Shown in pieces: positions 1-44,482 of a stretch of DNA of 64,000 bases. The stretch spans positions 1 through 64,000 of the IMG/VR virus record IMGVR_UViG_3300047157_000197, one strand, 5' to 3'. The notes under the pieces were generated by a model. The model saw only the letters and a list, made by a program, of their open reading frames with translations, made no database searches and was not told the origin of the DNA. The translations under genes were made by a program, and so were the position numbers. How positions within the stretch are numbered: the first letter of the stretch is position 1; each line of letters opens with the position of its first letter.

Positions 1-114
1 GAATACAAGTATTTAATCCTTCAAGGTGGACGATATTATATTTGTGGTAAATGTAATGATGTAACTTATCCTACCGAAGATATAGATAAGGTAGTAGAAA
101 GAGGAAGAGATTAA
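1..114 (+). CDS. 3' end of a hypothetical protein (CxxC), truncated by window edge
   Basis: Frame 1 reads EYKYLILQGGRYYICGKCNDVTYPTEDIDKVVERGRD-stop. Confidence 0.6.
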   Translation, partial: EYKYLILQGGRYYICGKCNDVTYPTEDIDKVVERGRD

Positions 115-543
115 CTAACCCTATATACATAATACCCCTATATACAGGTATACCGAATCCCACTACCGCATACTCTATACTCCCATACTCCCATACCAAC
201 AGTACCCCCTAACTCCAGACTCAACCCCAAACCCTTTCCCCCATAATAACCAAAACGATAACACCCTCGAACTCCCGATACTCACCTAAAACTTTCCCCA
301 TAACTCTCTCTATTCCAATGTGTTAAATGGGGGTAAAAGGGTGAGGGGGCTGTGAAAGTACGAGGTTTTTAATCCTTTTTAAGAGGGTCTGAGATTGAAT
401 CCGTACCAAGATATTACACCCTACCCTAATTAACCACTATACCCTCTTATATGGAGTGTACAAGGGAGTTGGGGAGTGGTGCACATACTCACTATGGGGT
501 AAGCGTATGTGTTGTTGGAGGTTATTTTTTTCCGGAGTAACTA

Positions 544-702
544 TGACACATTGTCACACCCCCTACTTGGGACTCAATTGCATTATTCGTAATTCTACAC
601 TATGACACCTTGTCACCCGATTATGGATTATTTAAAATATTGGAATAAACCGCCCATTTCATTGTCATATTCGTAAATCCACCATACTATGACACATTGT
701 CA
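544..702. promoter_or_regulatory. Three TGAC-N5-GTCA palindromic operator-like sites
   Basis: 544-556, 603-615, 690-702; half site at 662-667. Confidence 0.6.
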
Positions 703-711
703 TGAGATTTA

Positions 712-743
712 TTTGTTTATTTAAAAAAATTGTCGTATCTTTA
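712..743 (+). promoter_or_regulatory. Bacteroidota-type promoter (weaker match)
   Basis: TTTGT-N19-TATCTTTA. Confidence 0.5.
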
Positions 744-842
744 GGGTGGTTGTGGGTGGGAGTGTACACATCAGTATAAAGGGGTCACCAGCGGCACTGG
801 AGTACTGGAGTGGAAAATAAATTAAAAATAAGTCCTAAATTG

Positions 843-874
843 TTTGGTAGTCTCAGTTATTTTTCGTATATTAG
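843..874 (+). promoter_or_regulatory. Bacteroidota-type promoter
   Basis: TTTGG-N19-TATATTAG, 9 nt before ATG 884. Confidence 0.7.
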
Positions 875-883
875 TCATGTAAT

Positions 884-1102
884 ATGAGAGATATGAGAGA
901 TATAAAGAAATTAGTTCCCTATATAGGGTTAGGTGTAGTGATTGCCATTATACTGTTGTTGGTACCGATGATTATTCGAGGTTTTTTCGCGATATTGTTA
1001 CTTTTGATGAAAAATCCACTTGAATTCCTTATTGGAACCACGATTTTGCTCCTGTGTATGTATATAGGGGAGAAGATAATAAATAAACCATTAAATAAAT
1101 AA
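884..1102 (+). CDS. Small membrane protein
   Basis: 72 aa with 2-3 hydrophobic segments. Confidence 0.6.
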   Translation: MRDMRDIKKLVPYIGLGVVIAIILLLVPMIIRGFFAILLLLMKNPLEFLIGTTILLLCMYIGEKIINKPLNK

Positions 1103-1105
1103 AAC

Positions 1106-1438
1106 ATGAGAAACATTACCAAAATCCTCGACAGAAGTCAGAGGTTATTCCTAGCTGGGAATATGAAAAAGAGTTATTCTATCGCTATTGATGGGATTAC
1201 CGAACTATCCCAAGTAAACAGAAGATTAAACGAAGAAACCCAAGGTTGGGATTTAAAGAAAGCGTACGATTACAAGGGTACTTACAAGATTCAAGGTAAA
1301 ACTCTTACCAATTGGATGGAGAAATTATGGACAATAGTTGAAAATACTGGAGTTGAACCGATTGTAGAGGAGTATGAAACTGATATGATTCAGTACAGTA
1401 TAGATAATACACAGACGTTAGTAAAGAATAGAAAATAA
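1106..1438 (+). CDS. Hypothetical protein
   Basis: 110 aa ORF, A-rich leader, adjacent to upstream gene. Confidence 0.65.
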   Translation: MRNITKILDRSQRLFLAGNMKKSYSIAIDGITELSQVNRRLNEETQGWDLKKAYDYKGTYKIQGKTLTNWMEKLWTIVENTGVEPIVEEYETDMIQYSIDNTQTLVKNRK

Positions 1439-1449
1439 TTCTAATTTTA

Positions 1450-1481
1450 TTAGGATATATCAAATAAATTTTGTATATTAG
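1450..1481 (+). promoter_or_regulatory. Bacteroidota-type promoter in front of the candidate ncRNA
   Basis: TTAGG-N19-TATATTAG. Confidence 0.7.
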
Positions 1482-1486
1482 CCCTG

Positions 1487-1850
1487 TAGTTGAGGTTGAT
1501 GATTGAGAATATAGGGTTTGATTCCCTCTCTAGTTAATCTCCAAAGACCTCCTCTTAATAGAATTAGAGGCCGTCAGTAGTGTTGGGAGATACACCTACT
1601 ATAAAAACTGAATCTCTTTTAAAGAAATGTGAGCTGTTGGTGGTATTTTCTCACTCTAAACAACGAACCACCACATATAACGATGATGAGTCACAGGCGA
1701 TGAAATGATACTACGCTCGGAATCGAATTTCATCCACAGATTAGGGGTTTTCTGTGGAGATTAATAGGAGCCAACTCAACTCTCTCCTATCCTAAGTGTT
1801 CAATCTGAACCACCCACTAAGTTATGGCTTCCTTCTTAGTGGGTTTTTTT
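1487..1850 (+). ncRNA. Candidate large structured ncRNA (~365 nt) of unrecognised family
   Basis: Own promoter and terminator, no ORF, several perfect 7-10 bp helices, a long-range helix and two possible pseudoknots. Confidence 0.7.
1812..1850 (+). terminator. Rho-independent terminator
   Basis: ACCCACTAAG/CTTAGTGGGT 10 bp stem followed by a T run. Confidence 0.85.
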
Positions 1851-1864
1851 ATTCCCTATACTCT

Positions 1865-1932
1865 GGAGCCGGGAACATGACATAATGTCAGATGCTGGCT
1901 CCTGTACCTATTGTTAATAACTTGTTAATAAC
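1865..1932. repeat. Nested palindrome containing TGAC-N5-GTCA, then tandem TTGTTAATAAC x2
   Basis: GGAGCCGG(1865-72)/CTGGCTCC(1895-1902); TGACATAATGTCA 1878-1890; 11-mers at 1911-1921 and 1922-1932. Confidence 0.65.
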
Positions 1933-1956
1933 TTTTTTAAAATAAACCTCTTTTTA

Positions 1957-1988
1957 TTAGGTTTTTACAAAAAATAGTCGTATATTAC
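1957..1988 (+). promoter_or_regulatory. Bacteroidota-type promoter
   Basis: TTAGG-N19-TATATTAC. Confidence 0.7.
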
Positions 1989-2024
1989 ATATGTAATAAG
2001 TAATAATCCTTAAAACTAAAAAAT

Positions 2025-2849: not shown

Positions 2850-3008
2850 ATGAGTAAAATAGGAGATACAATCCGATTCAGATTCGCTGGTTGTTGGGAA
2901 TCAGGAGTGGTTACTGAGGTAGTTAAGAAAGGAAACAAGATTTTATCGTATAGGGTTAAGGATAGTAAATATACTTACTCTGTTGATAGGGTTAATGTTA
3001 AAAAGTAA
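2850..3008 (+). CDS. Small beta-rich (SH3/KOW-like) protein, missing from ORF track
   Basis: 52 aa MSKIGDTIRFRFAGCWESGVVTEV...; A-rich leader. Confidence 0.5.
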   Translation: MSKIGDTIRFRFAGCWESGVVTEVVKKGNKILSYRVKDSKYTYSVDRVNVKK

Positions 3009-7428: not shown

Positions 7429-8244
7429 ATGATATTAAATAAAAAATTACTGACCGAACGAGGATACCTAACCTTTAATTTAAAAGAGTTAGATGAAGAA
7501 CTTTATAATGAGTTTAAAAAAACATATACTAAAGAATTTTTAAATAAGAAAATAAAAATATTCAGATTTGATACCTCGATTGATATTAGTAATGGGGATG
7601 TGGTTCCAGATGAATTGTTTACAACACAATTTAAAGTTAAGTACGAGGGCGATACCTATATTAGAGAAGATGATTTTCCTATACGAGATATAAAAGGAAA
7701 GACACATGGCAAGATTGAAGAATTAAAAAAACTTCAAAACTATATAAATGAATTAGATACTCCACCAAATTTTGATAACGTAGGTCAAGAATGGTATTAT
7801 GGGCCATTACGAGTTATTGATAATTATGGAAATATAACCGAACCAGCCAAAACGTTACAAAAACTTTATATAGATGTTATTAAAAATTTATATAAAGATG
7901 ATATCGTAACTATTGAAGATTACCTACCACATACTACACGAAGACAAGACGGTAGTATAGTAGAAGGAACTGATGTTACAATGTATATTAAAAATAATTA
8001 TATCGCATCTCATGCAGATGGAATTGATGGTAATAGATTATGTGTATTATTAATGTATCTTAACGATGATTGGGAAAATGGATATGGTGGAGAAATTGTA
8101 GTGAACGAAGAAATAACAGTACCACCATTATTTGGAAATATTGTAATATTAGATTTCACAGAAAATAATATTGAACATGAAGTTTTAAAAGTACTAAACG
8201 AAAGTTTTGAAAGATATGCAATAATTAAGTTTTTTTACAAATAA
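7429..8244 (+). CDS. 2OG-Fe(II) oxygenase (prolyl-hydroxylase-like)
   Basis: HADG, LLMYLNDDWENGYGGE, distal HEV. Confidence 0.85.
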   Translation: MILNKKLLTERGYLTFNLKELDEELYNEFKKTYTKEFLNKKIKIFRFDTSIDISNGDVVPDELFTTQFKVKYEGDTYIREDDFPIRDIKGKTHGKIEELKKLQNYINELDTPPNFDNVGQEWYYGPLRVIDNYGNITEPAKTLQKLYIDVIKNLYKDDIVTIEDYLPHTTRRQDGSIVEGTDVTMYIKNNYIASHADGIDGNRLCVLLMYLNDDWENGYGGEIVVNEEITVPPLFGNIVILDFTENNIEHEVLKVLNESFERYAIIKFFYK

Positions 8245-11246: not shown

Positions 11247-13055
11247 ATGAATGAAGTTGAAAAAAGGATAAAACATCAAATAGATAACAATACTGGTCAA
11301 GTTGATTTAAAGATTGATTTGGTTAAGTATATGCAACAATCTGAACGTGCCAAACAATACGAGGAATCGGTGAAGGAAAAGGGTGAGGAATTCAAACACC
11401 AATTTCGATATGAGGTAATCGGTGAACAAGATGCACTTCTTTTTCAAGTTCCCAATATAAACGAATCGGGTTATTACGCGGGTGTGGTTGCCTTAAAATC
11501 ATATGTAGATAAGTTCCATTCGGATTTGAACGTTGAGATTATCGACCCCATTATAGATTACTTCTATTTAAACCCACCTAACAAAGAAGGTGATTTCTTT
11601 CAAATGTTTAATACCTACGCAAGACAAGGTGAGTGGGAAGAACTTTTAAAGTTTCAAGAGATACATGATATGTGCGAAGGATTCATTTTCAAATACATAG
11701 ATAAGTGTAATCCCGCCTTTATTGGTTTAAGTATCATTGATGGTAATATAGATGCATCTCTCGCAATTTCAAGTTTAATAAAAAAGAAATACCCTCATAT
11801 TAAAATACTAATGGGTGGAAATGGAATCGAGGTTTTAGATTTCGGTATGTTACCTAACTCAAAATATACTACAATAAATTATGATTTTGTAGATGTATTT
11901 TCAAGAGGTGATGGTGAAGCAACATTTGTTGAAATTCTTAAATGTGATATGAGTGATGATGCTCTTTCAAAGATTAAAGGTCTTGTTTGGAGAAAATCAA
12001 CAGGTGGGTATGTAGATACTCCAATGGAATTGACTCACAATCCAACGAGAGAAAACATAGATATGAATTCATTACCAATGCCTGATTATTCATCATTGGA
12101 ACAAAATTATTATTACCACTCTACATATCAATATTCAGTTCCTTTAGTTTTAAGTAGAGGTTGTCCATATCGTTGTACCTTTTGTTCAGTACCAGAATTT
12201 ATACCTGTATTTAGATATAGAACACACGAGAGTGTTTTAGAAGAAATGGAGTATTGGATAAACAAAGGAAGAAAGGGATTCTTCATGCACGATAGTATTA
12301 TCAATGGTAATCCAAAATGGTTAATGACCTTTTGTGAAATGATAATAGAAAGGTGGGGAGAATATCAAATTGATTTCGGTGGTAATATGAGATTACAAAA
12401 TGTAATGAGAAACTTAGATACAATGTGGTTATTTAGAAGAGCAGGATTATCCAAGATGATAACTGGCTTTGAATCTGCATCTGAACCTGTTTTGAAACAT
12501 ATGAAGAAATATACTTCTATGGAAGGTGTACGAGAAATCTTTGATAATGTAAGAGCAATAAACAAAGTACTACAAAAGGAAAGACCTCATGCACCAAAGA
12601 TGCAATTTGCAATGCAACTTATTATTGGGTACTTAAATGAAACACGAGTAGATTTTCAACGAACAGTAGATTTCGTAAAAGAATATAATGATTGTATGTC
12701 AGAGATACTTACTTGTTCTGCATTTCTACTTCATCAAACCCTACAAGATAAATGGGTAAAAGAAGGAGAACCTCTTATTCAACATAGAAACTCTGTTATA
12801 TTTGATACAATGTATAACACCACACAGAACAGATTAGATTGGTTAAATGAAATAGAGGTGGTTTTTAAAAATTACAACTTACCATATTCCATATACAATA
12901 GAGGAATCTTTTATGAACTTATAAAAGAAAACGAAAATGAACAAGTTCATTACACATGGATTGATGGAGAATTATTCTTTGGCCCAAACGGAGAAACTCC
13001 TCACATAAAACAAATCCAAGAAAAACTTGGTATAGTAAAAAAACAATTATTTTAA
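11247..13055 (+). CDS. B12-binding radical SAM protein (class B methyltransferase-like)
   Basis: SRGCPYRCTFC (CxxxCxxC), cobalamin-binding-like FIGLS...ILMGG and RGDGE segments. Confidence 0.88.
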   Translation: MNEVEKRIKHQIDNNTGQVDLKIDLVKYMQQSERAKQYEESVKEKGEEFKHQFRYEVIGEQDALLFQVPNINESGYYAGVVALKSYVDKFHSDLNVEIIDPIIDYFYLNPPNKEGDFFQMFNTYARQGEWEELLKFQEIHDMCEGFIFKYIDKCNPAFIGLSIIDGNIDASLAISSLIKKKYPHIKILMGGNGIEVLDFGMLPNSKYTTINYDFVDVFSRGDGEATFVEILKCDMSDDALSKIKGLVWRKSTGGYVDTPMELTHNPTRENIDMNSLPMPDYSSLEQNYYYHSTYQYSVPLVLSRGCPYRCTFCSVPEFIPVFRYRTHESVLEEMEYWINKGRKGFFMHDSIINGNPKWLMTFCEMIIERWGEYQIDFGGNMRLQNVMRNLDTMWLFRRAGLSKMITGFESASEPVLKHMKKYTSMEGVREIFDNVRAINKVLQKERPHAPKMQFAMQLIIGYLNETRVDFQRTVDFVKEYNDCMSEILTCSAFLLHQTLQDKWVKEGEPLIQHRNSVIFDTMYNTTQNRLDWLNEIEVVFKNYNLPYSIYNRGIFYELIKENENEQVHYTWIDGELFFGPNGETPHIKQIQEKLGIVKKQLF

Positions 13056-15303: not shown

Positions 15304-15787
15304 AAGACAGCTATTAATTATTGGATTTATTCTTATGGCAATAATAGTGAGAGTATTACCACATCCACCTAATGTTACACCAATACTTGCAATCGCTTTA
15401 TTTGGTGGAACTACATTTAAAAACAAATGGCTTGGTGTGTTACTACCTCTGATAGCAATGGGAATATCTGATATGTATTTAGGTTTTTATAGTATCTCTT
15501 ATTGGGTATATGGTTCGTTCTTTCTTGTTAGTATGTTAGGAACATATTGGAAAAAGATAGGGGTTAAGAATGTACTTATATCATCTTTAATCTTTTTTAT
15601 AATTACCAACTTTGGAGTTTGGTTAGGTGGTTATCCAAAAACAATAGAAGGGTTTTTACTTTGTTATACAATGGCAATACCTTTCTTTATAAACTCTATA
15701 TTAGGAAATTTATTTTTCAGTTATCTATTAAAGTATTCATTTAGATATTCTGAAAAGAAACTTATGCTCGGTTCGTCTATCGGTTAG
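15293..15787 (+). CDS. DUF6580-like putative transporter (ECF S-component-like)
   Basis: RVLPHPPNVTPILAIALFGG motif, multiple TMs; start moved to ATG 15293. Confidence 0.7.
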   Translation: MMNKRQLLIIGFILMAIIVRVLPHPPNVTPILAIALFGGTTFKNKWLGVLLPLIAMGISDMYLGFYSISYWVYGSFFLVSMLGTYWKKIGVKNVLISSLIFFIITNFGVWLGGYPKTIEGFLLCYTMAIPFFINSILGNLFFSYLLKYSFRYSEKKLMLGSSIG

Positions 15788-15837
15788 GACCTCAGGTTTT
15801 CATCCTGGTAAGAGGGGTTCGATTCCCCTACCGAGTA
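15766..15837 (+). tRNA. trnE: tRNA-Glu(TTC), no encoded CCA
   Basis: Acceptor GCTCGGT/ACCGAGT, anticodon arm CAGG-TTTTCAT-CCTG, T-loop TTCGATT. Confidence 0.93.
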
Positions 15838-15884
15838 CAACTATTGTTCATTGAAATATTGTTTAATTAAATAAAAATAAAATT

Positions 15885-16244
15885 ATGGAAACACTTTATA
15901 TTGTAATAGGTGCATTCTCATCCATTTTTATATTCCTTTTGGGATATGCGGTGAGTGGTGTGTTTAATGGAAAAAAAAGAGTAGATGAACTTGAGAAGTT
16001 CATTGATGTAACAGATGATAGAGTTACAGAAGTAGATAGAGAAAGAAACTTTTGGAAAGAAGATACTTACGCAACTCTTGAACGCTTAAACGAAGAAGAT
16101 GATAATATAAAAAAATTATTAGATTCAAGATTAGATAGATTAGAAAGTAGAATTATAGGTATGATTCCACCTACCAACGAAGAGTTGATGAAGCGAATCG
16201 AGAAAATAGAAGAAGAATCTTACAGATTAAGAATGAATATGTAA
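15885..16244 (+). CDS. N-terminal TM plus coiled-coil protein
   Basis: Hydrophobic N-terminus, heptad-rich remainder. Confidence 0.6.
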   Translation: METLYIVIGAFSSIFIFLLGYAVSGVFNGKKRVDELEKFIDVTDDRVTEVDRERNFWKEDTYATLERLNEEDDNIKKLLDSRLDRLESRIIGMIPPTNEELMKRIEKIEEESYRLRMNM

Positions 16245-16267
16245 GATATTAAATTGAACAATAGTTA

Positions 16268-16353
<86 letters not shown>

Positions 16354-16357
16354 AAAA

Positions 16358-16431
16358 GGGGAATTAGCTCAGTTGGCTAGAGCACTACGCTTGCACCGTA
16401 GGGGTCATCGGTTCGAATCCGATATTCTCCA
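16358..16431 (+). tRNA. trnA: tRNA-Ala(TGC)
   Basis: GGGGAAT/ATTCTCC acceptor with G3-U70, CTACG-CTTGCAC-CGTAG anticodon arm. Confidence 0.93.
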
Positions 16432-16472
16432 CAATGGTGGTATCACCACTAATTAATAATAATAATAAAAAC

Positions 16473-16943
16473 ATGAGTAAATTAAAAGAAAAGTTTGGTA
16501 AATACTTTCAATTCAAAAATACCACAAATGGAACTGATTACTTTTTAAGAGGATTGGCACTAATATTATTCATCATTCCAATAGGAATATGTATAGGAAT
16601 AGGAATCGCATTACTTCCATCTAATCCAGCAATCGCAGGATTATTAGTTGGGTTAGGTGTATTGGGTGTTATACCAATGATATGGTTTTCACTAGCAACT
16701 ACTTACAAAAGAATCAATGCATTCTTTCCTGGTAAAGCTGGATGGTTAGTAGCAATAACAATTTTATATTCTTTTATCTTAGAAGCATTTAATCCTCAGA
16801 ATGTATTAAATACGTTGGATACACCAGCACCAACTTTACCTAATGGAGATTACATTACTTATTTAGTATTAGCAATACCTTCATTAGTGTGGAGTTTATA
16901 TTTACTATTTGGTAATTCAAAAGTTAAAAAACATATTGGATAA
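16473..16943 (+). CDS. DUF805-like membrane protein
   Basis: YFLRG...SLATTYKRINA pattern; start moved to ATG 16473. Confidence 0.6.
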   Translation: MSKLKEKFGKYFQFKNTTNGTDYFLRGLALILFIIPIGICIGIGIALLPSNPAIAGLLVGLGVLGVIPMIWFSLATTYKRINAFFPGKAGWLVAITILYSFILEAFNPQNVLNTLDTPAPTLPNGDYITYLVLAIPSLVWSLYLLFGNSKVKKHIG

Positions 16944-17320
16944 TGAATAAGGTATTCTTATTTATATTACTTCTAACTTCTTCCTTACTTAGTTCACAAA
17001 ACTTTGTTGGGGAGAATTTTAGGTTATCAACGGATAGTGGTAACGTAGTAATTACATTTGAGGACCAAAATTCTGATGGAACTTATATTGGTGGTGTACT
17101 AACTAAATCATTTGGAAAACTTACAATTACAAAAAAAGAATTCCAAACTAAGTTTATTCCTAATCTAAAAAAGATTAGTGGTAAAAAAGATTATGAGATA
17201 GTAGAAGGTTCATATCGATTAGATAAATACTCGTTTGATACAGAGAGTGTATTTATACAAGTAGGTAATAAGATAGGTTCTATTACAACAAAAGAAATTA
17301 AAAAGTTAAGAAAACTATAA
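16943..17320 (+). CDS. Secreted protein
   Basis: Signal peptide ending LLSS|Q. Confidence 0.6.
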   Translation: MNKVFLFILLLTSSLLSSQNFVGENFRLSTDSGNVVITFEDQNSDGTYIGGVLTKSFGKLTITKKEFQTKFIPNLKKISGKKDYEIVEGSYRLDKYSFDTESVFIQVGNKIGSITTKEIKKLRKL

Positions 17321-17326
17321 AACTAA

Positions 17327-17401
17327 GCCTTTGTAGCTCAGCTGGCTAGAGCATCTGCATTTGTAATCAGAATGTCGTGGGTTCGAGTCCCTCCAAAGGC
17401 T
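17327..17401 (+). tRNA. trnT: tRNA-Thr(TGT) with an extra nucleotide in the anticodon stem
   Basis: GCCTTTG/CAAAGGC acceptor; TCTG(C)A-TTTGTAA-TCAGA anticodon arm. Confidence 0.82.
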
Positions 17402-17424
17402 CAATAATAATTTAAACAAAGTAA

Positions 17425-20726: not shown

Positions 20727-23021
20727 ATGAAAGGAACTTTATTCTCAGCGGATTTTATAGAAGATTCAAGCTCAAACCTTAGATTATTAGAATTAAATAC
20801 CGATACTGGTTTTATATCAAATACATTAGATACACGATTTGATTTTACAGCTTTCAACACAGTACTATCAACAAATAATATAACAGAGCTAGTTATTGTT
20901 TATAAAGATTTTCAAAAAAACTTTGTAACAACACTTGAATCATATATACAATCCAACGCAACATTTATAACAACAGTTACAAAACAAGTTGAGGATTCTG
21001 ATAGTATATATCCTACGGCAGTTACTGATGCTGCTGATAAGTTTATACTTAGGTTAGCATATGATGAAAACGCATTGTTTGATTCAACGTATTGTAAAGA
21101 AAGAGCAAATGTACAAAAATTATTTTATGATAATTCTGCAACAGGTTCTATACCTGAGTTTTATTATAGTGGTAGTGATTATGTTGTAAATACACTTACT
21201 AGTGATTTAAACGCACATTCAATTTTACCTGATTTAGTTGTTAAAGATAAAACAGAAACATTTAGTCCTTTAAGGTTTTTAAAACTTGGTAACGCAACAT
21301 CAGCTTCTGCAGATAGAATTAGTGATTACGTTAACAATTACATAGGAGATTCTCAAACAGTTGAAAAATTCCATTACAACAATGCAGATATTACAGCGGA
21401 TAATAAATTATCAGCTATAAGAATATTTGGGATTGTATATGGTTCAGATATTAATCATGTAGTTATTGGTCAATATAAAGTACCATCGTTTTTTGAAATA
21501 CCAACGGCCGATTCTTTATCTTATATAGAATCTAATAAATTAATAAATGAATACCAACCTAAACATTATTTTGAACTTACTTCAAATTATGTTAGACTTA
21601 CAACAGAAGATGCAATTCATAAAGATGAAGTAGTAATCACATCTACTGATGGTGAACTACAAGTAGAAAATGTAGTAACTGGTTCTCTGCTTAAATCAAT
21701 GTTTATTGCTGGGTCACCAGATACTGATGATTTAGATGTTTATAAACATTGGGTTGCAACTGGTTCTATACTTCCAAGCGGTTCGTTTGTAACACAATCA
21801 ATTGTTACTTCAGTTGAGGAAAGTTCGCTTGATAATTATGGTATGACTGGAGAAATTATATTAGCAAATGATGAAAAAATATATACATCTATAACAAAAA
21901 ATTTATTAGCATATAATACAAGTTCTAATGATTATAGATTCTTACAACAGTACGAACTAATACCATCAGAACATTTCTTAGTAGATAAAGATGATAATAA
22001 AATTAATATAGTAGCTAACAATGTTGCAGTATTAGATGATGCATCAATTGAAAATTATTATAGAATTGATGTTGAAACAACCGATTCATATTTTGTAAGT
22101 GCATCTGCAAATTCATTTATTGTTCACAATGCTCCATGTTTTATAGCAGGAACTAAAGTTCATATAGAAGAAAAAGGAATAACAAACATTGAAGATGTTG
22201 AAGTTGGAGATAAAGTTATTTCATACAACCACGATACAGACACATCAGAATATAAAGAAGTATTAAAGGTTAGAAAACAAGAAGATAAAAATGTTGTAAA
22301 ATATGTATTTGAAAATGGTACAGAATTAACAGGTACACCAGACCACCCATTGTTTGTAAATGGCAAAGGATACTCTTCATATTATCCAAAAGAAACACTT
22401 GAAGATAGTGGATTGGACGTAGAACAGATATTACTTGGTGATGAAGTTTTACATATAGATGGATATGGTGTAGTTATATCTGATATTATAGAGATAGAAG
22501 AAACACATACAGTTTATAATCTAGAAGAAGTAGAAGATAATCATAACTTTTTTGTAAACCAATTTTTGGCACACAATAGAGAAAGTTTACCTTGTTGTTT
22601 TATCGCAGGTACACAAATATCTTTATCTAATAACGATAGTAAAAATATAGAAGATATTATAATAGGTGATGAAGTAATAGGTTGGAAAGATGGTGAGTTT
22701 ACAAATGGTCTTGTAACTGAGTTAAAACCAACAATACTAGGTAACCGTTCTTTATATAATATCAACGATTTTGAATTAACATTTACAAGTGAACATCCAT
22801 TTTTAACAAAAGATGGTTGGAAATCAATTGCACCAGATAGTGGAACTGGTTATGGAATTTTAGAAGTAAATGATATTATCAATAAAGATGGTAAATGGAT
22901 TCAAATAAAAGAAATCAAAGAAGTTCAAGGAGATGCTGAATACAACACTCCAGTTTATAACTTTACAGTAAAGGATATTCGCAGTTATATTGCTGATGGT
23001 ATCGTAGTACATAACAAATAA
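20727..23021 (+). CDS. Protein with three tandem Hint (intein-like) domains, the first degenerate
   Basis: ...IVHN-AP-CFIAGTKV...TPDH...LAHN-RESLPC-CFIAGTQI...TSEH...VVHN-K. Confidence 0.85.
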   Translation: MKGTLFSADFIEDSSSNLRLLELNTDTGFISNTLDTRFDFTAFNTVLSTNNITELVIVYKDFQKNFVTTLESYIQSNATFITTVTKQVEDSDSIYPTAVTDAADKFILRLAYDENALFDSTYCKERANVQKLFYDNSATGSIPEFYYSGSDYVVNTLTSDLNAHSILPDLVVKDKTETFSPLRFLKLGNATSASADRISDYVNNYIGDSQTVEKFHYNNADITADNKLSAIRIFGIVYGSDINHVVIGQYKVPSFFEIPTADSLSYIESNKLINEYQPKHYFELTSNYVRLTTEDAIHKDEVVITSTDGELQVENVVTGSLLKSMFIAGSPDTDDLDVYKHWVATGSILPSGSFVTQSIVTSVEESSLDNYGMTGEIILANDEKIYTSITKNLLAYNTSSNDYRFLQQYELIPSEHFLVDKDDNKINIVANNVAVLDDASIENYYRIDVETTDSYFVSASANSFIVHNAPCFIAGTKVHIEEKGITNIEDVEVGDKVISYNHDTDTSEYKEVLKVRKQEDKNVVKYVFENGTELTGTPDHPLFVNGKGYSSYYPKETLEDSGLDVEQILLGDEVLHIDGYGVVISDIIEIEETHTVYNLEEVEDNHNFFVNQFLAHNRESLPCCFIAGTQISLSNNDSKNIEDIIIGDEVIGWKDGEFTNGLVTELKPTILGNRSLYNINDFELTFTSEHPFLTKDGWKSIAPDSGTGYGILEVNDIINKDGKWIQIKEIKEVQGDAEYNTPVYNFTVKDIRSYIADGIVVHNK

Positions 23022-42763: not shown

Positions 42764-44482
42764 ATGAGTAACGGTTATATTTTAGGAATAAGTTGTGGTT
42801 ATCATGATAGTGCAGCTGCATTAATTAAAGATGGGAATGTTTTGGGTGCATGTGAAGAAGAAAGATTCACTGGTATCAAACATGATTCTAGATTTCCAAT
42901 TAATACTATAAAGTGGTTAATGAAAACATACAAAGTAACACCAGATACTTTAAACGCTATCTGTTTTTACGAAAACCCACAAAATAAATTAGATAGAATA
43001 AAAGTAAGTACCGAAAAAAAACCTAAAAAATGGTATGAGTTTTTAAATAAAAAAAATAGTATTTTAATTAAAAATCAAGAGGCTTATAAAATTCTTCAAG
43101 AACAATTAAAAACTCTTTGTGGTAAAAATACAAAAATACATTATACTGACCACCACCAATCACATTTAGCATATTCATATTACACTTCAAACTTTAACGA
43201 ATCTGCAATCCTTTCAGTTGATGGTGTAGGTGAGTGGGAAACAACTGTTTTAGGAATAGGAACTGAAAATAAAATAAAAAAATTAAATAGTGTAAATTTT
43301 CCTCATTCCCTTGGAATGTTATATTCAACATTTACTGCCTTTCTTGGGTTTAAACCAAACGAGGGTGAGTATAAAGTAATGGGTTTAGCACCATATGGTA
43401 AACCTGAAAAGTATAATAAATTATTTAAGGAATTATATACAGAAAAAGAAGATGGTACTTTTGAATTAAAAATGGAGTACTTTACATACGAGTATTCTAA
43501 TACACATATGTTTAATGAAAAGTTAGGAAAATTATTTGAATTTCCAAACAGATTACCAGAAGAGCCATTAGAACAACATCACAAGGATTTAGCAGCATCA
43601 TTACAATACAATTACGAAAAACTATTTTTTAGATTATTGAATGAATTACATGATAAAACAAAATCTGACAACTTATGTTTGAGTGGTGGGTGTGCTTATA
43701 ATGGAACTGCAAATGGTAAGATATTAAAAAGAACAAACTTTAAAAATCTATACATCCCACCTGCTCCATCAGATGCTGGTTCTGCTATTGGATGTGGACT
43801 TGATTATTACTATAAATCAAAAGATAATGTAAGAATAAAAAATTCAAACCCATATCTTGGTCCAATGTATTCAAAAGATGAAATTTTTGAAGCAACAGAA
43901 AAATATAAAGATAAAATTTGGGTAGAAACAAAACTTTATGAACAAATTATTGATATTGTTGCTGAAGAAATTAAAGATGGTAGTGTTATAGGATGGTTTC
44001 AAGGTAGGATGGAGTTTGGTGCACGTGCATTAGGTAATCGTTCTATCTTAGCAAATCCAAGAGACCCTCAAATGAAATCTCGTTTAAATAAGATGATTAA
44101 AAAAAGAGAAGGGTTTAGACCTTTTGCTCCAATTGTAAAAGAATCTTCTTCAACCAGTTATTTTAATTACGAAGATACTGTACCTTATATGAATCAGGTA
44201 GTAAAGGTAAAAAGCCATCATGCAAAAAACTTACCAGCAATAACACATATTGATAATTCAGCTAGAATACAAACTCTAAATAAAAATCAACATAGACATA
44301 TGTTTTCTTTGTTAGAAAAATTAGAAACAATAAATGATTACCCTATTGTTATAAACACTTCATTTAATTTAAAAGACCAAACAATGGTTCTTACACCCGA
44401 GGATGCAATTAAAACTTTCTTAAATTGTGAAATGGATATTCTTATACTTCATAACCTTATAATTAAAAAAAAGATACTTTAG
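42764..44482 (+). CDS. Carbamoyltransferase (NodU/CmcH/TobZ family)
   Basis: GYHDSAA, EEERF, HHQSH, VDGVGE, GEYKVMGLAPYG, SDAG, GARALGNRS, RPFAP, NTSFN. Confidence 0.95.
   Translation: MSNGYILGISCGYHDSAAALIKDGNVLGACEEERFTGIKHDSRFPINTIKWLMKTYKVTPDTLNAICFYENPQNKLDRIKVSTEKKPKKWYEFLNKKNSILIKNQEAYKILQEQLKTLCGKNTKIHYTDHHQSHLAYSYYTSNFNESAILSVDGVGEWETTVLGIGTENKIKKLNSVNFPHSLGMLYSTFTAFLGFKPNEGEYKVMGLAPYGKPEKYNKLFKELYTEKEDGTFELKMEYFTYEYSNTHMFNEKLGKLFEFPNRLPEEPLEQHHKDLAASLQYNYEKLFFRLLNELHDKTKSDNLCLSGGCAYNGTANGKILKRTNFKNLYIPPAPSDAGSAIGCGLDYYYKSKDNVRIKNSNPYLGPMYSKDEIFEATEKYKDKIWVETKLYEQIIDIVAEEIKDGSVIGWFQGRMEFGARALGNRSILANPRDPQMKSRLNKMIKKREGFRPFAPIVKESSSTSYFNYEDTVPYMNQVVKVKSHHAKNLPAITHIDNSARIQTLNKNQHRHMFSLLEKLETINDYPIVINTSFNLKDQTMVLTPEDAIKTFLNCEMDILILHNLIIKKKIL

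What the first reader, a model, noticed from the sequence alone, without database searches (positions are those of the whole stretch)
1487..1850. Self-contained ~365 nt, multi-domain structured ncRNA of no recognisable family
Seen: it has its own promoter (1450-1481) and terminator (1812-1850) and no ORF. Long-range helix TTAATCTCC(1534-42)/GGAGATTAA(1756-64) closes a multi-branch domain. Inside it: CCTCT/AGAGG (1551-70); AGTAGTGT/ACAC-c-TACT (1576-1600); GTGAG/CTCAC (1629-54), whose loop TGGTGGT(1638-44) can pair with ACCACCA(1667-73) as an H-type pseudoknot; GATGAAAT(1699-1706)/ATTTCATC(1727-34); CCACAGA/TCTGTGG (1734-57). Then ATAGGAG/CTCCTAT (1764-90), whose loop CCAACTCAACT can pair with the 5' end AGTTGAG-g-TTG (1488-98). 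GATTGA(1501-06)/TCAATC(1800-05) closes the ends. Some helices share bases, which hints at switching. I see no RNase P, tmRNA, SRP or intron signature. Inference: an undescribed phage ribozyme-like or scaffold RNA.
Basis: partly seen in the sequence, partly recalled or inferred. Interest (0 to 1): 0.85.

Follow-up and report, generated by a model that had tools for sequence, protein, structure and literature searches.

The report
Modular pseudoknotted RNA of marine phages
The flagged stretch is a real, separately transcribed non-coding RNA of an uncultured 276-kb marine phage; it belongs to a widespread, apparently undescribed RNA family built from a conserved 5' hairpin, swappable middle modules and a knotted 3' end, and its function is unknown.

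Summary
Real, and apparently new. Window ~1484-1850 (+) is a stand-alone non-coding transcription unit of an uncultured 276-kb marine phage. It has a promoter of the phage's own repeated class (1450-1479), no ORF, and an intrinsic terminator (1812-1850).

The family occurs in at least 120 marine metagenome stretches and several IMG/VR contigs, with 76 distinct full units of about 210-710 nt. It is absent from Rfam 15, GenBank phages, 185,579 reference genomes (apart from one mis-binned contig) and the searchable literature.

It rejects four proposed pairings: the long-range closing helix, the 5'-end/loop pairing, GATTGA/TCAATC and GATGAAAT/ATTTCATC.

The real plan is linear and modular:
- a 5' clamp hairpin with an invariant internal loop;
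- an insertion site for exchangeable modules (here X and Y; in relatives tRNA-like elements, a cloverleaf, even small ORFs);
- a conserved 3' domain: a hairpin presenting a near-invariant 25-nt loop, a GGGG-loop hairpin, a CU-rich strand, and a terminator whose loop is tied back by a covarying pseudoknot.

Function is unknown. I favour a stable, trans-acting early RNA particle or decoy (about 0.4). The main rival is a cis-acting transcript-end cassette.

The parts
1450..1479 (+). Promoter: TTAGGA (1450-1455), 18-nt spacer, TATATT (1474-1479). Start of transcription inferred at about 1485-1488.
   Evidence: The same composite motif occurs 12 times in the window, mostly just upstream of genes. 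A consensus cTTGGATAT..TTTTTCGTATATTTAC is seen in 58 distinct homologous upstream regions, at a fixed 18-20 nt from the 5' domain. The generic sigma-70 scan did not list it. The start site is inferred, not measured.
1492..1541 (+). 5' domain. Helix P1 (1492-1500 with 1533-1541) encloses the invariant internal loop GAUU (1501-04) / UA (1531-32), the invariant 3-bp GAG/CUC (1505-07 / 1528-30), and an optional apical hairpin (1513-16 / 1524-27, loop UUUGAUU).
   Evidence: P1 is 98.6% paired; 4 of 5 counted pairs change on both sides; 0/500 shuffles reach the observed values; slid controls give 34-57%. Abundant G.U pairs fix the strand as +. The apical stem covaries (AGGG/CCCU against GGAG/CUCC), but its loop varies and it is absent in many members.
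1546..1617 (+). Module X. Hairpin X1: 1546-48/1573-75 and 1551-55/1566-70. Hairpin X2: 1576-83/1592-1600. The X2 loop (1586-91) can pair with 1612-17 to form an H-type pseudoknot.
   Evidence: The X1 inner stem has four compensatory variants. X2 and its pseudoknot never vary, so they are plausible but untested. The module is present in only some relatives.
1629..1673 (+). Module Y, an H-type pseudoknot: S1 is 1629-33/1650-54 and S2 is 1638-44/1667-73.
   Evidence: At least five S1 variants and four S2 variants are all compensatory, for example UGGUGGU/ACCACCA, UGGUAGU/ACUACCA, UGGUGAU/AUCACCA and GGUAAU/AUUACC.
1681..1725 (+). Core hairpin: Pa (1681-84/1722-25), a 2x2 G/A internal loop, and Pb (1687-90/1716-19), closing a near-invariant 25-nt loop at 1691-1715 (UCAnAGGyGAUGAAAUGAUACUACG).
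   Evidence: Pb is 98% paired and 2 of its 4 pairs covary. Pa covaries as CGAU/AUCG, UGAU/AUCA and AGAU/AUCU. The loop is identical in lineages reached through a neighbouring protein, that is, not selected on the loop itself. An independent search on the 3' part found only a one-base-shorter variant.
1734..1757 (+). Hairpin H2, with the conserved loop UUAGGGGUUU (1741-1750).
   Evidence: 99% paired; all 6 counted pairs change on both sides; 34 distinct complementary stem combinations.
1766..1833 (+). Pseudoknot PK3: purine strand 1766-1772 pairs with the terminator-loop bases 1826-28 and 1830-33. It encloses the conserved CU-rich strand (1780-1792) and the small hairpin 1798-1801/1807-1810.
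   Evidence: Compensatory variants include GGAGACCA/UGGUCUCC, GGAGACUAU/AUAGUCUCC, GGGGACUU/AAGUCUCC, AGGGUGAU/AUCACCCU, AGAGACUC/GAGUCUCU and GAGGCCA/UGGCCUC. In a model-derived alignment that did not include this pairing, 69.7% of cells pair at slide 0 against 32-56% when slid. A subfamily with different sequences keeps the same topology.
1812..1850 (+). Intrinsic terminator: 10-bp stem 1812-21/1835-44, 13-nt loop, and a U7 tail (1844-1850).
   Evidence: 95-97% paired; 3 pairs change on both sides. The generic terminator scan missed it because the loop exceeds 8 nt.

Best explanation
This is a stand-alone early phage gene for a stable, structured, trans-acting RNA.

SHOWN
- A promoter of the phage's repeated class drives a non-coding unit of about 365 nt that ends at an intrinsic terminator.
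- The RNA is a linear chain of modules: a 5'-terminal clamp hairpin (P1) carrying an invariant internal loop; a single insertion site that in this phage holds modules X and Y; and a conserved 3' domain.
- In the 3' domain one hairpin displays a near-invariant 25-nt loop, a second displays a GGGG loop, and the terminator's own loop is tied back to an upstream purine strand by a pseudoknot that wraps a conserved CU-rich strand.
- The 5' and 3' domains alone make up the smallest members (about 210 nt). They are therefore the functional core, and the middle is an expansion site.

INFERRED
- The invariant loops and the CU-rich strand pack into one tertiary core that binds a macromolecule (a host or phage protein, the ribosome, or further copies of the RNA) at the start of infection, as a decoy or RNP.
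- The clamped 5' end and the knotted 3' end protect the RNA from end-dependent decay.
- The inserted modules, including tRNA look-alikes in relatives, tune or add targets. Their rapid exchange reflects an arms-race locus.
For: Transcription unit:
- Promoter class and a covarying terminator.
- 66 of 76 distinct units have no ORF of 45 aa or more.

RNA-level selection on the + strand:
- P1, Pb, H2, the terminator, Y S1/S2, X1 and PK3 all covary.
- There are many G.U pairs.

Core plus expansion site:
- Six minimal members of 210-226 nt consist of the 5' and 3' domains only, and RNAalifold recovers the same helices in them.
- Cargo varies among close relatives sharing 76-91% identical flanking genes.
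- The 3' part never occurs without the core hairpin (75 of 76, the exception cut by a contig end).

Invariant bases lie in loops and junctions while the helices covary, which is the usual signature of a tertiary fold or binding surface.

The neighbourhood is an early-gene block of small ORFs, one with a weak Gp4.5-like hit.

The closest analogy is GOLLD/ROOL: phage-encoded, with a conserved region plus a variable linker that sometimes holds tRNAs (PMC12286853, read).
Against: - No expression, stability or binding data exist.
- No conserved partner protein was found nearby; there are only small ORFs of unknown function.
- The same 5' and 3' domains flank small ORFs in 10 of 76 units, and the 3' domain alone follows protein genes in L077 and L089. 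A bare core hairpin plus U-run ends a gene in about 175-kb relatives. All three fit a cis role.
- The single-sequence folding energy is unremarkable.
- Tertiary contacts among invariant bases cannot be tested by covariation, and the mutual-information scan found none.
Confidence: 0.4

Rival explanations
1. Cis-acting transcript-end cassette. The 5' hairpin and the knotted 3' domain are portable UTR modules, a 5' stabiliser plus a reinforced terminator. They bound early transcription units and, like PeSL promoter-terminator cassettes of T4-type phages, serve as recombination points. The window's RNA would then be such a unit whose cargo happens to be non-coding.
For: - 10 of 76 units carry an ORF of 45 aa or more between the domains, and 4 have the 3' domain after a protein gene with no 5' domain.
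- A core hairpin plus U-run ends a gene in related 175-kb phages.
- A new promoter follows the terminator within 260 nt in 48 of 71 units.
- Module shuffling occurs between near-identical flanks.
- The PeSL precedent (PMC2839356, PMC4122927; titles and abstracts seen).
Against: - 87% of units encode nothing.
- The minimal members are only 5' domain plus 3' domain, a unit with nothing to stabilise.
- A 25-nt near-invariant loop, a conserved GGGG loop and a conserved CU-rich strand are far more than a terminator needs.
- The cargo modules are themselves under RNA-structure selection.
Confidence: 0.22
2. A new ribozyme class. The covarying helices hold invariant loop and junction bases that form an active site, for example for self-processing of the modular transcript.
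For: The conservation pattern (invariant unpaired bases, covarying stems, several pseudoknots) is the one typical of ribozymes. The modular transcripts with tRNA-like inserts might need processing.
Against: - No match to any ribozyme model in Rfam at E<=10.
- No conserved candidate cleavage site was identified.
- The core hairpin also works as a simple stand-alone element.
Confidence: 0.1
3. Precursor of small stable RNAs. The transcript is cut by tRNA-processing enzymes into pieces, tRNA look-alikes among them, that act on translation or decoy tRNA-targeting defences.
For: Relatives carry a 160-230-nt element closed by a 7-bp acceptor-like stem plus a T-arm (module Z), and a 75-nt four-way cloverleaf with compensatory changes in all four arms (module W). 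True tRNA genes lie within 1-2 kb in several loci.
Against: - The window's RNA has neither Z nor W.
- Its T-loop-like apical hairpin has a variable loop in relatives.
- ARAGORN and the Rfam tRNA/tmRNA models reject Z and W; only inconsistent sub-threshold calls appear.
- There is no encoded CCA and no G3.U70.
Confidence: 0.1
4. Riboswitch-like attenuator. The conserved 3' domain senses a ligand or factor and controls read-through of its terminator into the next early genes.
For: A conserved structured domain sits immediately upstream of, and is interlocked with, an intrinsic terminator. The H2 GGGGUU loop could in principle pair with the AACCACC at the foot of the terminator. That is my inference from the sequence; both partners are invariant, so it is untestable here.
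Against: - The downstream gene usually has its own promoter (48 of 71).
- The covarying tertiary pairing uses the terminator loop, which exists only once the hairpin has formed.
- No covarying antiterminator was found.
- The domain lies at the 3' end of non-coding units rather than in a 5' leader.
Confidence: 0.06
5. Not an RNA. It would be a DNA-level element (origin, packaging or recombination site), or decayed coding sequence.
For: It lies about 0.6 kb downstream of a conserved 760-nt gene-free region with repeats and inside the 2-kb overlap of the contig ends.
Against: - Strand-specific G.U pairs.
- Compensatory changes in nine or more helices.
- A promoter and a terminator bracket it.
- No reading frame is conserved.
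Confidence: 0.02

Closest known systems
GOLLD and ROOL RNAs (large ornate phage/prophage RNAs of unknown function)
   Same: Phage-encoded, several pseudoknots, no known protein partner. Conserved region(s) plus a variable linker that in GOLLD sometimes holds tRNAs; often near tRNA genes (PMC12286853). Here too, conserved 5' and 3' domains flank a variable insert that in relatives holds tRNA-like elements.
   Different: No sequence or structure match to the Rfam models. It is two to four times smaller (210-710 nt, against about 600-800 or more). It is an early-promoter unit ending in a knotted terminator. Multimerisation is untested.
tmRNA, and plant-virus tRNA-like structures with upstream pseudoknot domains
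   Same: A string of H-type pseudoknots. Relatives have an acceptor-like stem plus a T-arm closing a long insert.
   Different: No G3.U70, no encoded CCA, and no conserved tag reading frame. ARAGORN (default) and Rfam are negative. Only inconsistent permuted-tmRNA guesses appear at relaxed thresholds, with tags that run into or beyond the terminator. The window's member has no tRNA-like ends at all.
PeSL promoter-terminator cassettes of T4-type phages
   Same: A repeated early promoter and a stem-loop terminator bound small early units, and modules are shuffled between close relatives (PMC2839356 and PMC4122927).
   Different: A PeSL is a short composite DNA motif. Here about 210 nt of RNA structure with invariant loops and covarying helices is conserved, and most units carry no gene.
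phi29 pRNA (packaging RNA)
   Same: A structured phage RNA of a few hundred nucleotides made from an early promoter. Loop-to-strand pairing that covaries could in principle act between molecules. This comparison rests on my own knowledge of pRNA.
   Different: No match to the Rfam pRNA model. The phage type is unrelated. No evidence of ring formation or of a link to packaging.

Membership tests
tmRNA (standard or permuted) | Detected by ARAGORN or the Rfam tmRNA models | tested here: not met
   ARAGORN at default settings finds none. Rfam finds none at E<=10. At -ps70/80 only mutually inconsistent guesses appear, all marked 'Tag not identified'.
tmRNA (standard or permuted) | tRNA-like domain with a G3.U70 acceptor pair, a T-arm and a 3' CCA | tested here: not met
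   The only T-loop-like hairpin (1513-1527) is an optional apical element whose loop varies in relatives. The 9-bp pairing 1534-42/1756-64 has A3-U70 and is not conserved.
tmRNA (standard or permuted) | Conserved tag reading frame with a resume codon and a stop | tested here: not met
   No frame is conserved. Homologues differ by 1-2-nt indels within the candidate frames.
tRNA | Cloverleaf recognised by ARAGORN or Rfam RF00005 | tested here: not met
   The four tRNAs of the window lie at 15.7-17.4 kb; there is none at 1484-1850. Modules Z and W of relatives are also rejected.
GOLLD / ROOL / OLE / HEARO / raiA and other large Rfam RNAs | Match to the family covariance model | tested here: not met
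   cmscan of 1350-2000 at E<=10, and of 14 related loci at E<=0.5 to 1, gave no hit other than true tRNAs and chance matches.
Known self-cleaving ribozymes (hammerhead, twister, pistol, hatchet, HDV-like and others) | Match to the Rfam model or core consensus | tested here: not met
   No hit at E<=10. The GAUGA..GAAA..GAUAC run in the loop lacks the CUGAnGA core. That last point is my reading of the sequence.
Known self-cleaving ribozymes (hammerhead, twister, pistol, hatchet, HDV-like and others) | Self-cleavage activity | not testable with these tools
   Needs in-vitro transcription and cleavage assays.
Riboswitch / transcription attenuator | Mutually exclusive terminator and antiterminator, with the aptamer in a 5' leader of the regulated gene | tested here: inconclusive
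   The domain abuts a terminator. No covarying antiterminator was found, and the next gene usually has its own promoter.
PeSL-type promoter-terminator cassette | A short composite of a stem-loop terminator and an early promoter, repeated at module boundaries | tested here: inconclusive
   A terminator followed by a promoter within 260 nt occurs in 48 of 71 units, and the promoter is repeated 12 times in the window. The conserved RNA is much larger and is selected for structure.
phi29-type pRNA | Match to the Rfam pRNA model | tested here: not met
   The Rfam pRNA model gave no hit.
phi29-type pRNA | Intermolecular loop-loop pairing that forms a ring on the portal | not testable with these tools
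   Whether PK3 forms within one molecule or between molecules cannot be decided from sequence.

The most novel reading that the evidence does not exclude
A new class of ornate phage RNA with two possible readings.

(a) Its conserved 5' and 3' domains fold, perhaps joining several copies through the covarying purine-strand/terminator-loop pairing acting between molecules, as in pRNA or the ROOL/GOLLD cages. The resulting particle would display the invariant 25-nt loop and capture a host factor (a ribosomal component, a tRNA-handling enzyme or a defence nuclease) in the first minutes of infection. The exchangeable inserts, including tRNA mimics, would act as interchangeable baits.

(b) Alternatively, the invariant core is a new ribozyme.
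Probability: 0.2. Interest if true: 0.92.

Novelty: categorically new. Interest (0 to 1): 0.8.

Why it matters
Large bacterial and phage RNAs with many covarying helices and invariant loops have nearly always turned out to be ribozymes, sensors or RNP cores. Very few new classes of this complexity are found.

It sits among the first genes of big uncultured phages. It also shows something unusual, a fixed 5'/3' chassis into which pseudoknots, tRNA mimics, a cloverleaf or small genes are swapped between close relatives.

That makes it three things:
- a tractable candidate for a new RNA-based host-takeover or anti-defence device;
- a natural example of modular RNA engineering, including a terminator locked by a pseudoknot that may be a general 3'-end protection device;
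- a ready-made comparative data set for structure determination.

Tried and rejected
1. Permuted tmRNA. It was prompted by the T-loop-like GGGUUUGAUUCCC and by 'CUCCA' at 1538-42. ARAGORN and Rfam are negative, the acceptor pairing is not conserved, there is no tag frame, and the T-loop hairpin is optional with a variable loop.

2. Decoy ribosome-binding site, or a lambda-bar-like minigene (AGG..AUG AAA UGA / AUG AUA) in the invariant loop. The L173/L174 variant lacks one U, and so loses both the UGA and the second AUG.

3. Antisense RNA against a conserved host gene. The 25-nt loop pattern, searched on both strands, occurs in none of 185,579 reference genomes except one mis-binned phage contig. 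The 64-kb window holds no second match with up to 3 mismatches.

4. Hidden protein gene or alternative genetic code. There are stops of several kinds in all frames, and homologues differ by non-triplet indels.

5. Conserved protein partner next door. Only small early ORFs are present (72, 110, 86 and 78 aa), with no Pfam, PHROG or Atlas lead.

6. Tertiary covariation of the two variable loop positions. Only subfamily-linked signals appeared.

7. Close relatives in GenBank phages. None by blastn, even for the 35-nt core at E<=1.

8. Literature. No paper holds the motif strings in a relevant context. The 2023 catalogue of 10,006 viral candidate RNAs could not be checked because its supplements are not held.

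9. Column-wise counting of PK3 on MAFFT or model alignments is blurred by register shifts (68-70% paired). I therefore relied on unaligned best-duplex listings.

Full report
WHERE IT IS

The window is the start of IMG/VR contig IMGVR_UViG_3300047157_000197, 275,970 bp. About 2.0 kb at the two contig ends overlap. They differ only by homopolymer indels, one C/T at 1541 and a 90-nt indel. This looks like a long-read assembly of a circular map, so I do not claim a physical terminal repeat.

All ORFs of 120 aa or more but three run on the + strand, and G+C is 30%. The baseplate wedge protein is 36-42% identical to those of Microcystis phage Mel-JY01, Flavobacterium 'immuto' phages and a 484-kb uncultured phage. 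Shine-Dalgarno use is weak: 15 of 66 genes have an SD-like 4-mer, and the upstream regions are 52% A. The host is unknown. A Bacteroidota-like host is only a guess.

THE OBSERVATION

The folding energy is ordinary (z = -1.57). Rfam 15 gives nothing at gathering thresholds or at E<=10. ARAGORN at default settings finds no tRNA or tmRNA there. The question could therefore be answered only with homologues.

FINDING RELATIVES

GenBank phages hold no match.

The 110-aa ORF just upstream (1106-1438) has relatives at 62-91% identity. Their contigs show a 500-650-nt gene-free gap after the gene wherever identity is 76% or more. The gap is absent in the 62-65% relatives.

Alignment of those gaps showed a constant 5' leader, a constant 3' part, and a middle that differs by whole blocks.

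An 18-23-nt string from the constant 3' part was then found in:
- several IMG/VR contigs;
- one 2.3-kb contig of a 'Methanobacteriota' MAG, which is simply this phage.

About 100 distinct contexts resulted. A covariance model of the 3' domain finds exactly one copy in the window (1673-1849, 170.7 bits) and one per locus in all but one case.

STRUCTURE SUPPORTED BY COVARIATION (window coordinates)

1. 5' domain
- Helix P1 (1492-1500/1533-1541) is 98.6% paired. Four of five counted pairs change on both sides, 0/500 shuffles reach the observed values, and slid controls give 34-57%.
- P1 encloses invariant GAUU / UA and GAG/CUC. An optional apical hairpin has a covarying stem, but its 'T-loop' varies or is missing in relatives.
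- The many G.U pairs would be A.C on the other strand. The structure therefore belongs to the + strand RNA.

2. Module X
- Hairpin X1 covaries.
- Hairpin X2, and a possible pseudoknot of its loop with 1612-17, never vary.

3. Module Y

4. 3' domain
- Pa and Pb close a near-invariant 25-nt loop (1691-1715).
- H2 (1734-40/1751-57) is 99% paired, with all six counted pairs changed on both sides.
- The terminator is 95-97% paired.
- A purine strand (1766-72) pairs with the loop of the terminator hairpin (1826-33). At least six compensatory variants of this pairing exist, and a divergent subfamily keeps the same topology.
- RNAalifold on six minimal members independently recovers P1, Pa/Pb, H2, the small hairpin and the terminator, with 14 compensatory pairs.

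WHAT IS NOT SUPPORTED
- The long-range helix 1534-42/1756-64 is 43.6% paired.
- GATGAAAT/ATTTCATC is 36-66% paired.
- GATTGA/TCAATC is complementary in 3 of 43 variants.
- The 5'-end/loop pairing scores no better than permuted partners.

These are accidents of this one sequence. The multi-branch closed architecture and the 'switching' idea fall with them. The local ATAGGAG/CTCCTAT hairpin remains possible and competes with PK3.

THE FAMILY

Among 76 distinct units with the full 3' domain (213-709 nt), 66 have no ORF of 45 aa or more and 64 begin with the 5' domain. The smallest, 210-226 nt, are the 5' domain plus the 3' domain only.

The insertion site holds, in different relatives:
- X;
- Y;
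- Z, a 160-230-nt element closed by an acceptor-like 7-bp stem and a T-arm;
- W, a 75-nt four-way cloverleaf with non-tRNA loops and compensatory changes in all four arms;
- or a small ORF.

Neither ARAGORN nor Rfam accepts Z or W.

The 3' part never occurs without the core hairpin. The core hairpin does occur alone, followed by a U-run, after a gene in related phages of about 175 kb.

A search anchored on the 3' part, and so blind to the loop, found a variant loop one base shorter. The loop is therefore highly but not absolutely conserved. Much of the apparent invariance in the metagenome set comes from the search pattern itself.

Neighbouring genes are small early ORFs shared across the lineage, with no informative family match.

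PROMOTER AND TERMINATOR

The -35-like TTAGGA/TTGGAT, a 17-18-nt spacer and TATATT form a motif conserved in 58 upstream regions, at a fixed distance from the 5' domain. It is repeated 12 times in the window, mostly just upstream of genes. A further promoter follows the terminator within 260 nt in 48 of 71 units.

HOW IT MOST LIKELY WORKS

Shown: an autonomous, non-coding, strongly structured transcript with a conserved two-part core and an expansion site.

Inferred: the invariant unpaired bases (the 25-nt loop, the GGGG loop, the CU-rich strand and the 5' internal loop) form a tertiary core or binding surface, and the clamped 5' end and knotted 3' end make the RNA long-lived.

I favour a trans-acting early RNA particle or decoy (0.4). 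The main rival is a cis-acting 5'/3' cassette for early transcripts (0.22). That rival explains the ORF-bearing units. It does not explain the cargo-free minimal members or the amount of invariant sequence. A new ribozyme (0.1), a precursor of tRNA-like small RNAs (0.1), an attenuator (0.06) and a DNA-level element (0.02) follow.

COMPARISON WITH WHAT IS KNOWN

It works most like GOLLD/ROOL: phage-encoded, pseudoknotted, with conserved regions around a variable linker that can hold tRNAs (PMC12286853). It is not a member, because the models do not match and the size and layout differ.

It shares pseudoknot strings and, in relatives, tRNA-like ends with tmRNA and viral tRNA-like structures, but it fails every defining test.

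Its promoter-terminator setting recalls PeSL cassettes.

I found no description of it. The 2023 catalogue of viral candidate RNAs could not be checked, so an unnamed overlapping candidate there cannot be excluded.

VERDICT

A real feature: a new structured RNA family of unknown function.

Noticed in passing
window 114-880: A 760-nt gene-free stretch upstream of the early genes, 78-80% identical in relatives. It has almost G-free blocks (150-300, 400-450) and three copies of ACTATGACAC(A/C)TTGTCA at 540, 599 and 686. A 27-nt piece (302-328) is 78% identical to the RNA's conserved CU-rich strand at 1778-1804. A promoter-like motif lies at 712-742. Its nature (another RNA, an origin, or operator sites) is unexplained.
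   Followed up: partly
window 1866-1933: Just after the RNA's terminator, a GGAGCC..GGCTCC hairpin encloses another ATGACATAATGTCA palindrome. It is followed by two copies of TTGTTAATAAC. Both are conserved in relatives and may be regulator binding sites.
   Followed up: no
window 1-2023 and L001 4800-6918: The two ends of the 275,970-bp contig overlap by about 2.0 kb, with homopolymer indels, a 90-nt indel and a C/T at window 1541. This suggests a long-read assembly of a circular map. Sequence errors in the window are therefore possible.
   Followed up: yes
window 15766-17402: A cluster of four tRNA genes (Glu, Ser, Ala). The fourth, at 17327-17402, scores 56 bits with the Rfam tRNA model, but ARAGORN reads it as 'tRNA-???' with a two-base anticodon.
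   Followed up: no
window 20727-23021: A 764-aa ORF carries a Hint/intein domain at about residues 460-660. Outside the intein it has no relatives in GenBank phages.
   Followed up: no
window 2850-3008: A 52-aa early ORF, conserved in 23 related loci, has a weak Pfam hit to the T7 Gp4.5 inhibitor of toxin-antitoxin activation (E 0.029, below the family cut-off). This hints that the block holds anti-defence genes.
   Followed up: no
L052 (JABJFP010000298.1): A 2.3-kb contig of a GTDB MAG labelled 'Methanobacteriota archaeon SI074_bin128' carries this phage's RNA and its upstream region at about 94% identity. It is almost certainly a binning contaminant.
   Followed up: partly
L010 3334-4140 (ERZ10646601 contig_3638): Here the tRNA-like module Z breaks off after GTCTACTCA. 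It is followed by a coding fragment and second copies of the 72-aa and 110-aa genes. This is either a structural variant or a misassembly.
   Followed up: partly
L063 680-1070; L088, L062, L112 and L098 around the motif: In other marine phage contigs the core hairpin is joined to different downstream structures. In L063 a true tRNA gene lies about 270 nt downstream. In L088, L062 and L112 there is a long region rich in hairpins. These may be further RNA classes that use the same hairpin module.
   Followed up: no
window 11247-13055, 42764-44482, 7429-8244; L001 813-1451: Auxiliary metabolic-type genes: a radical SAM/B12-binding protein, a carbamoyltransferase (about 30% identical to those of cyanophages and Pelagibacter phage HTVC008M), a 2OG-Fe(II) oxygenase and a DegT-family aminotransferase.
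   Followed up: no
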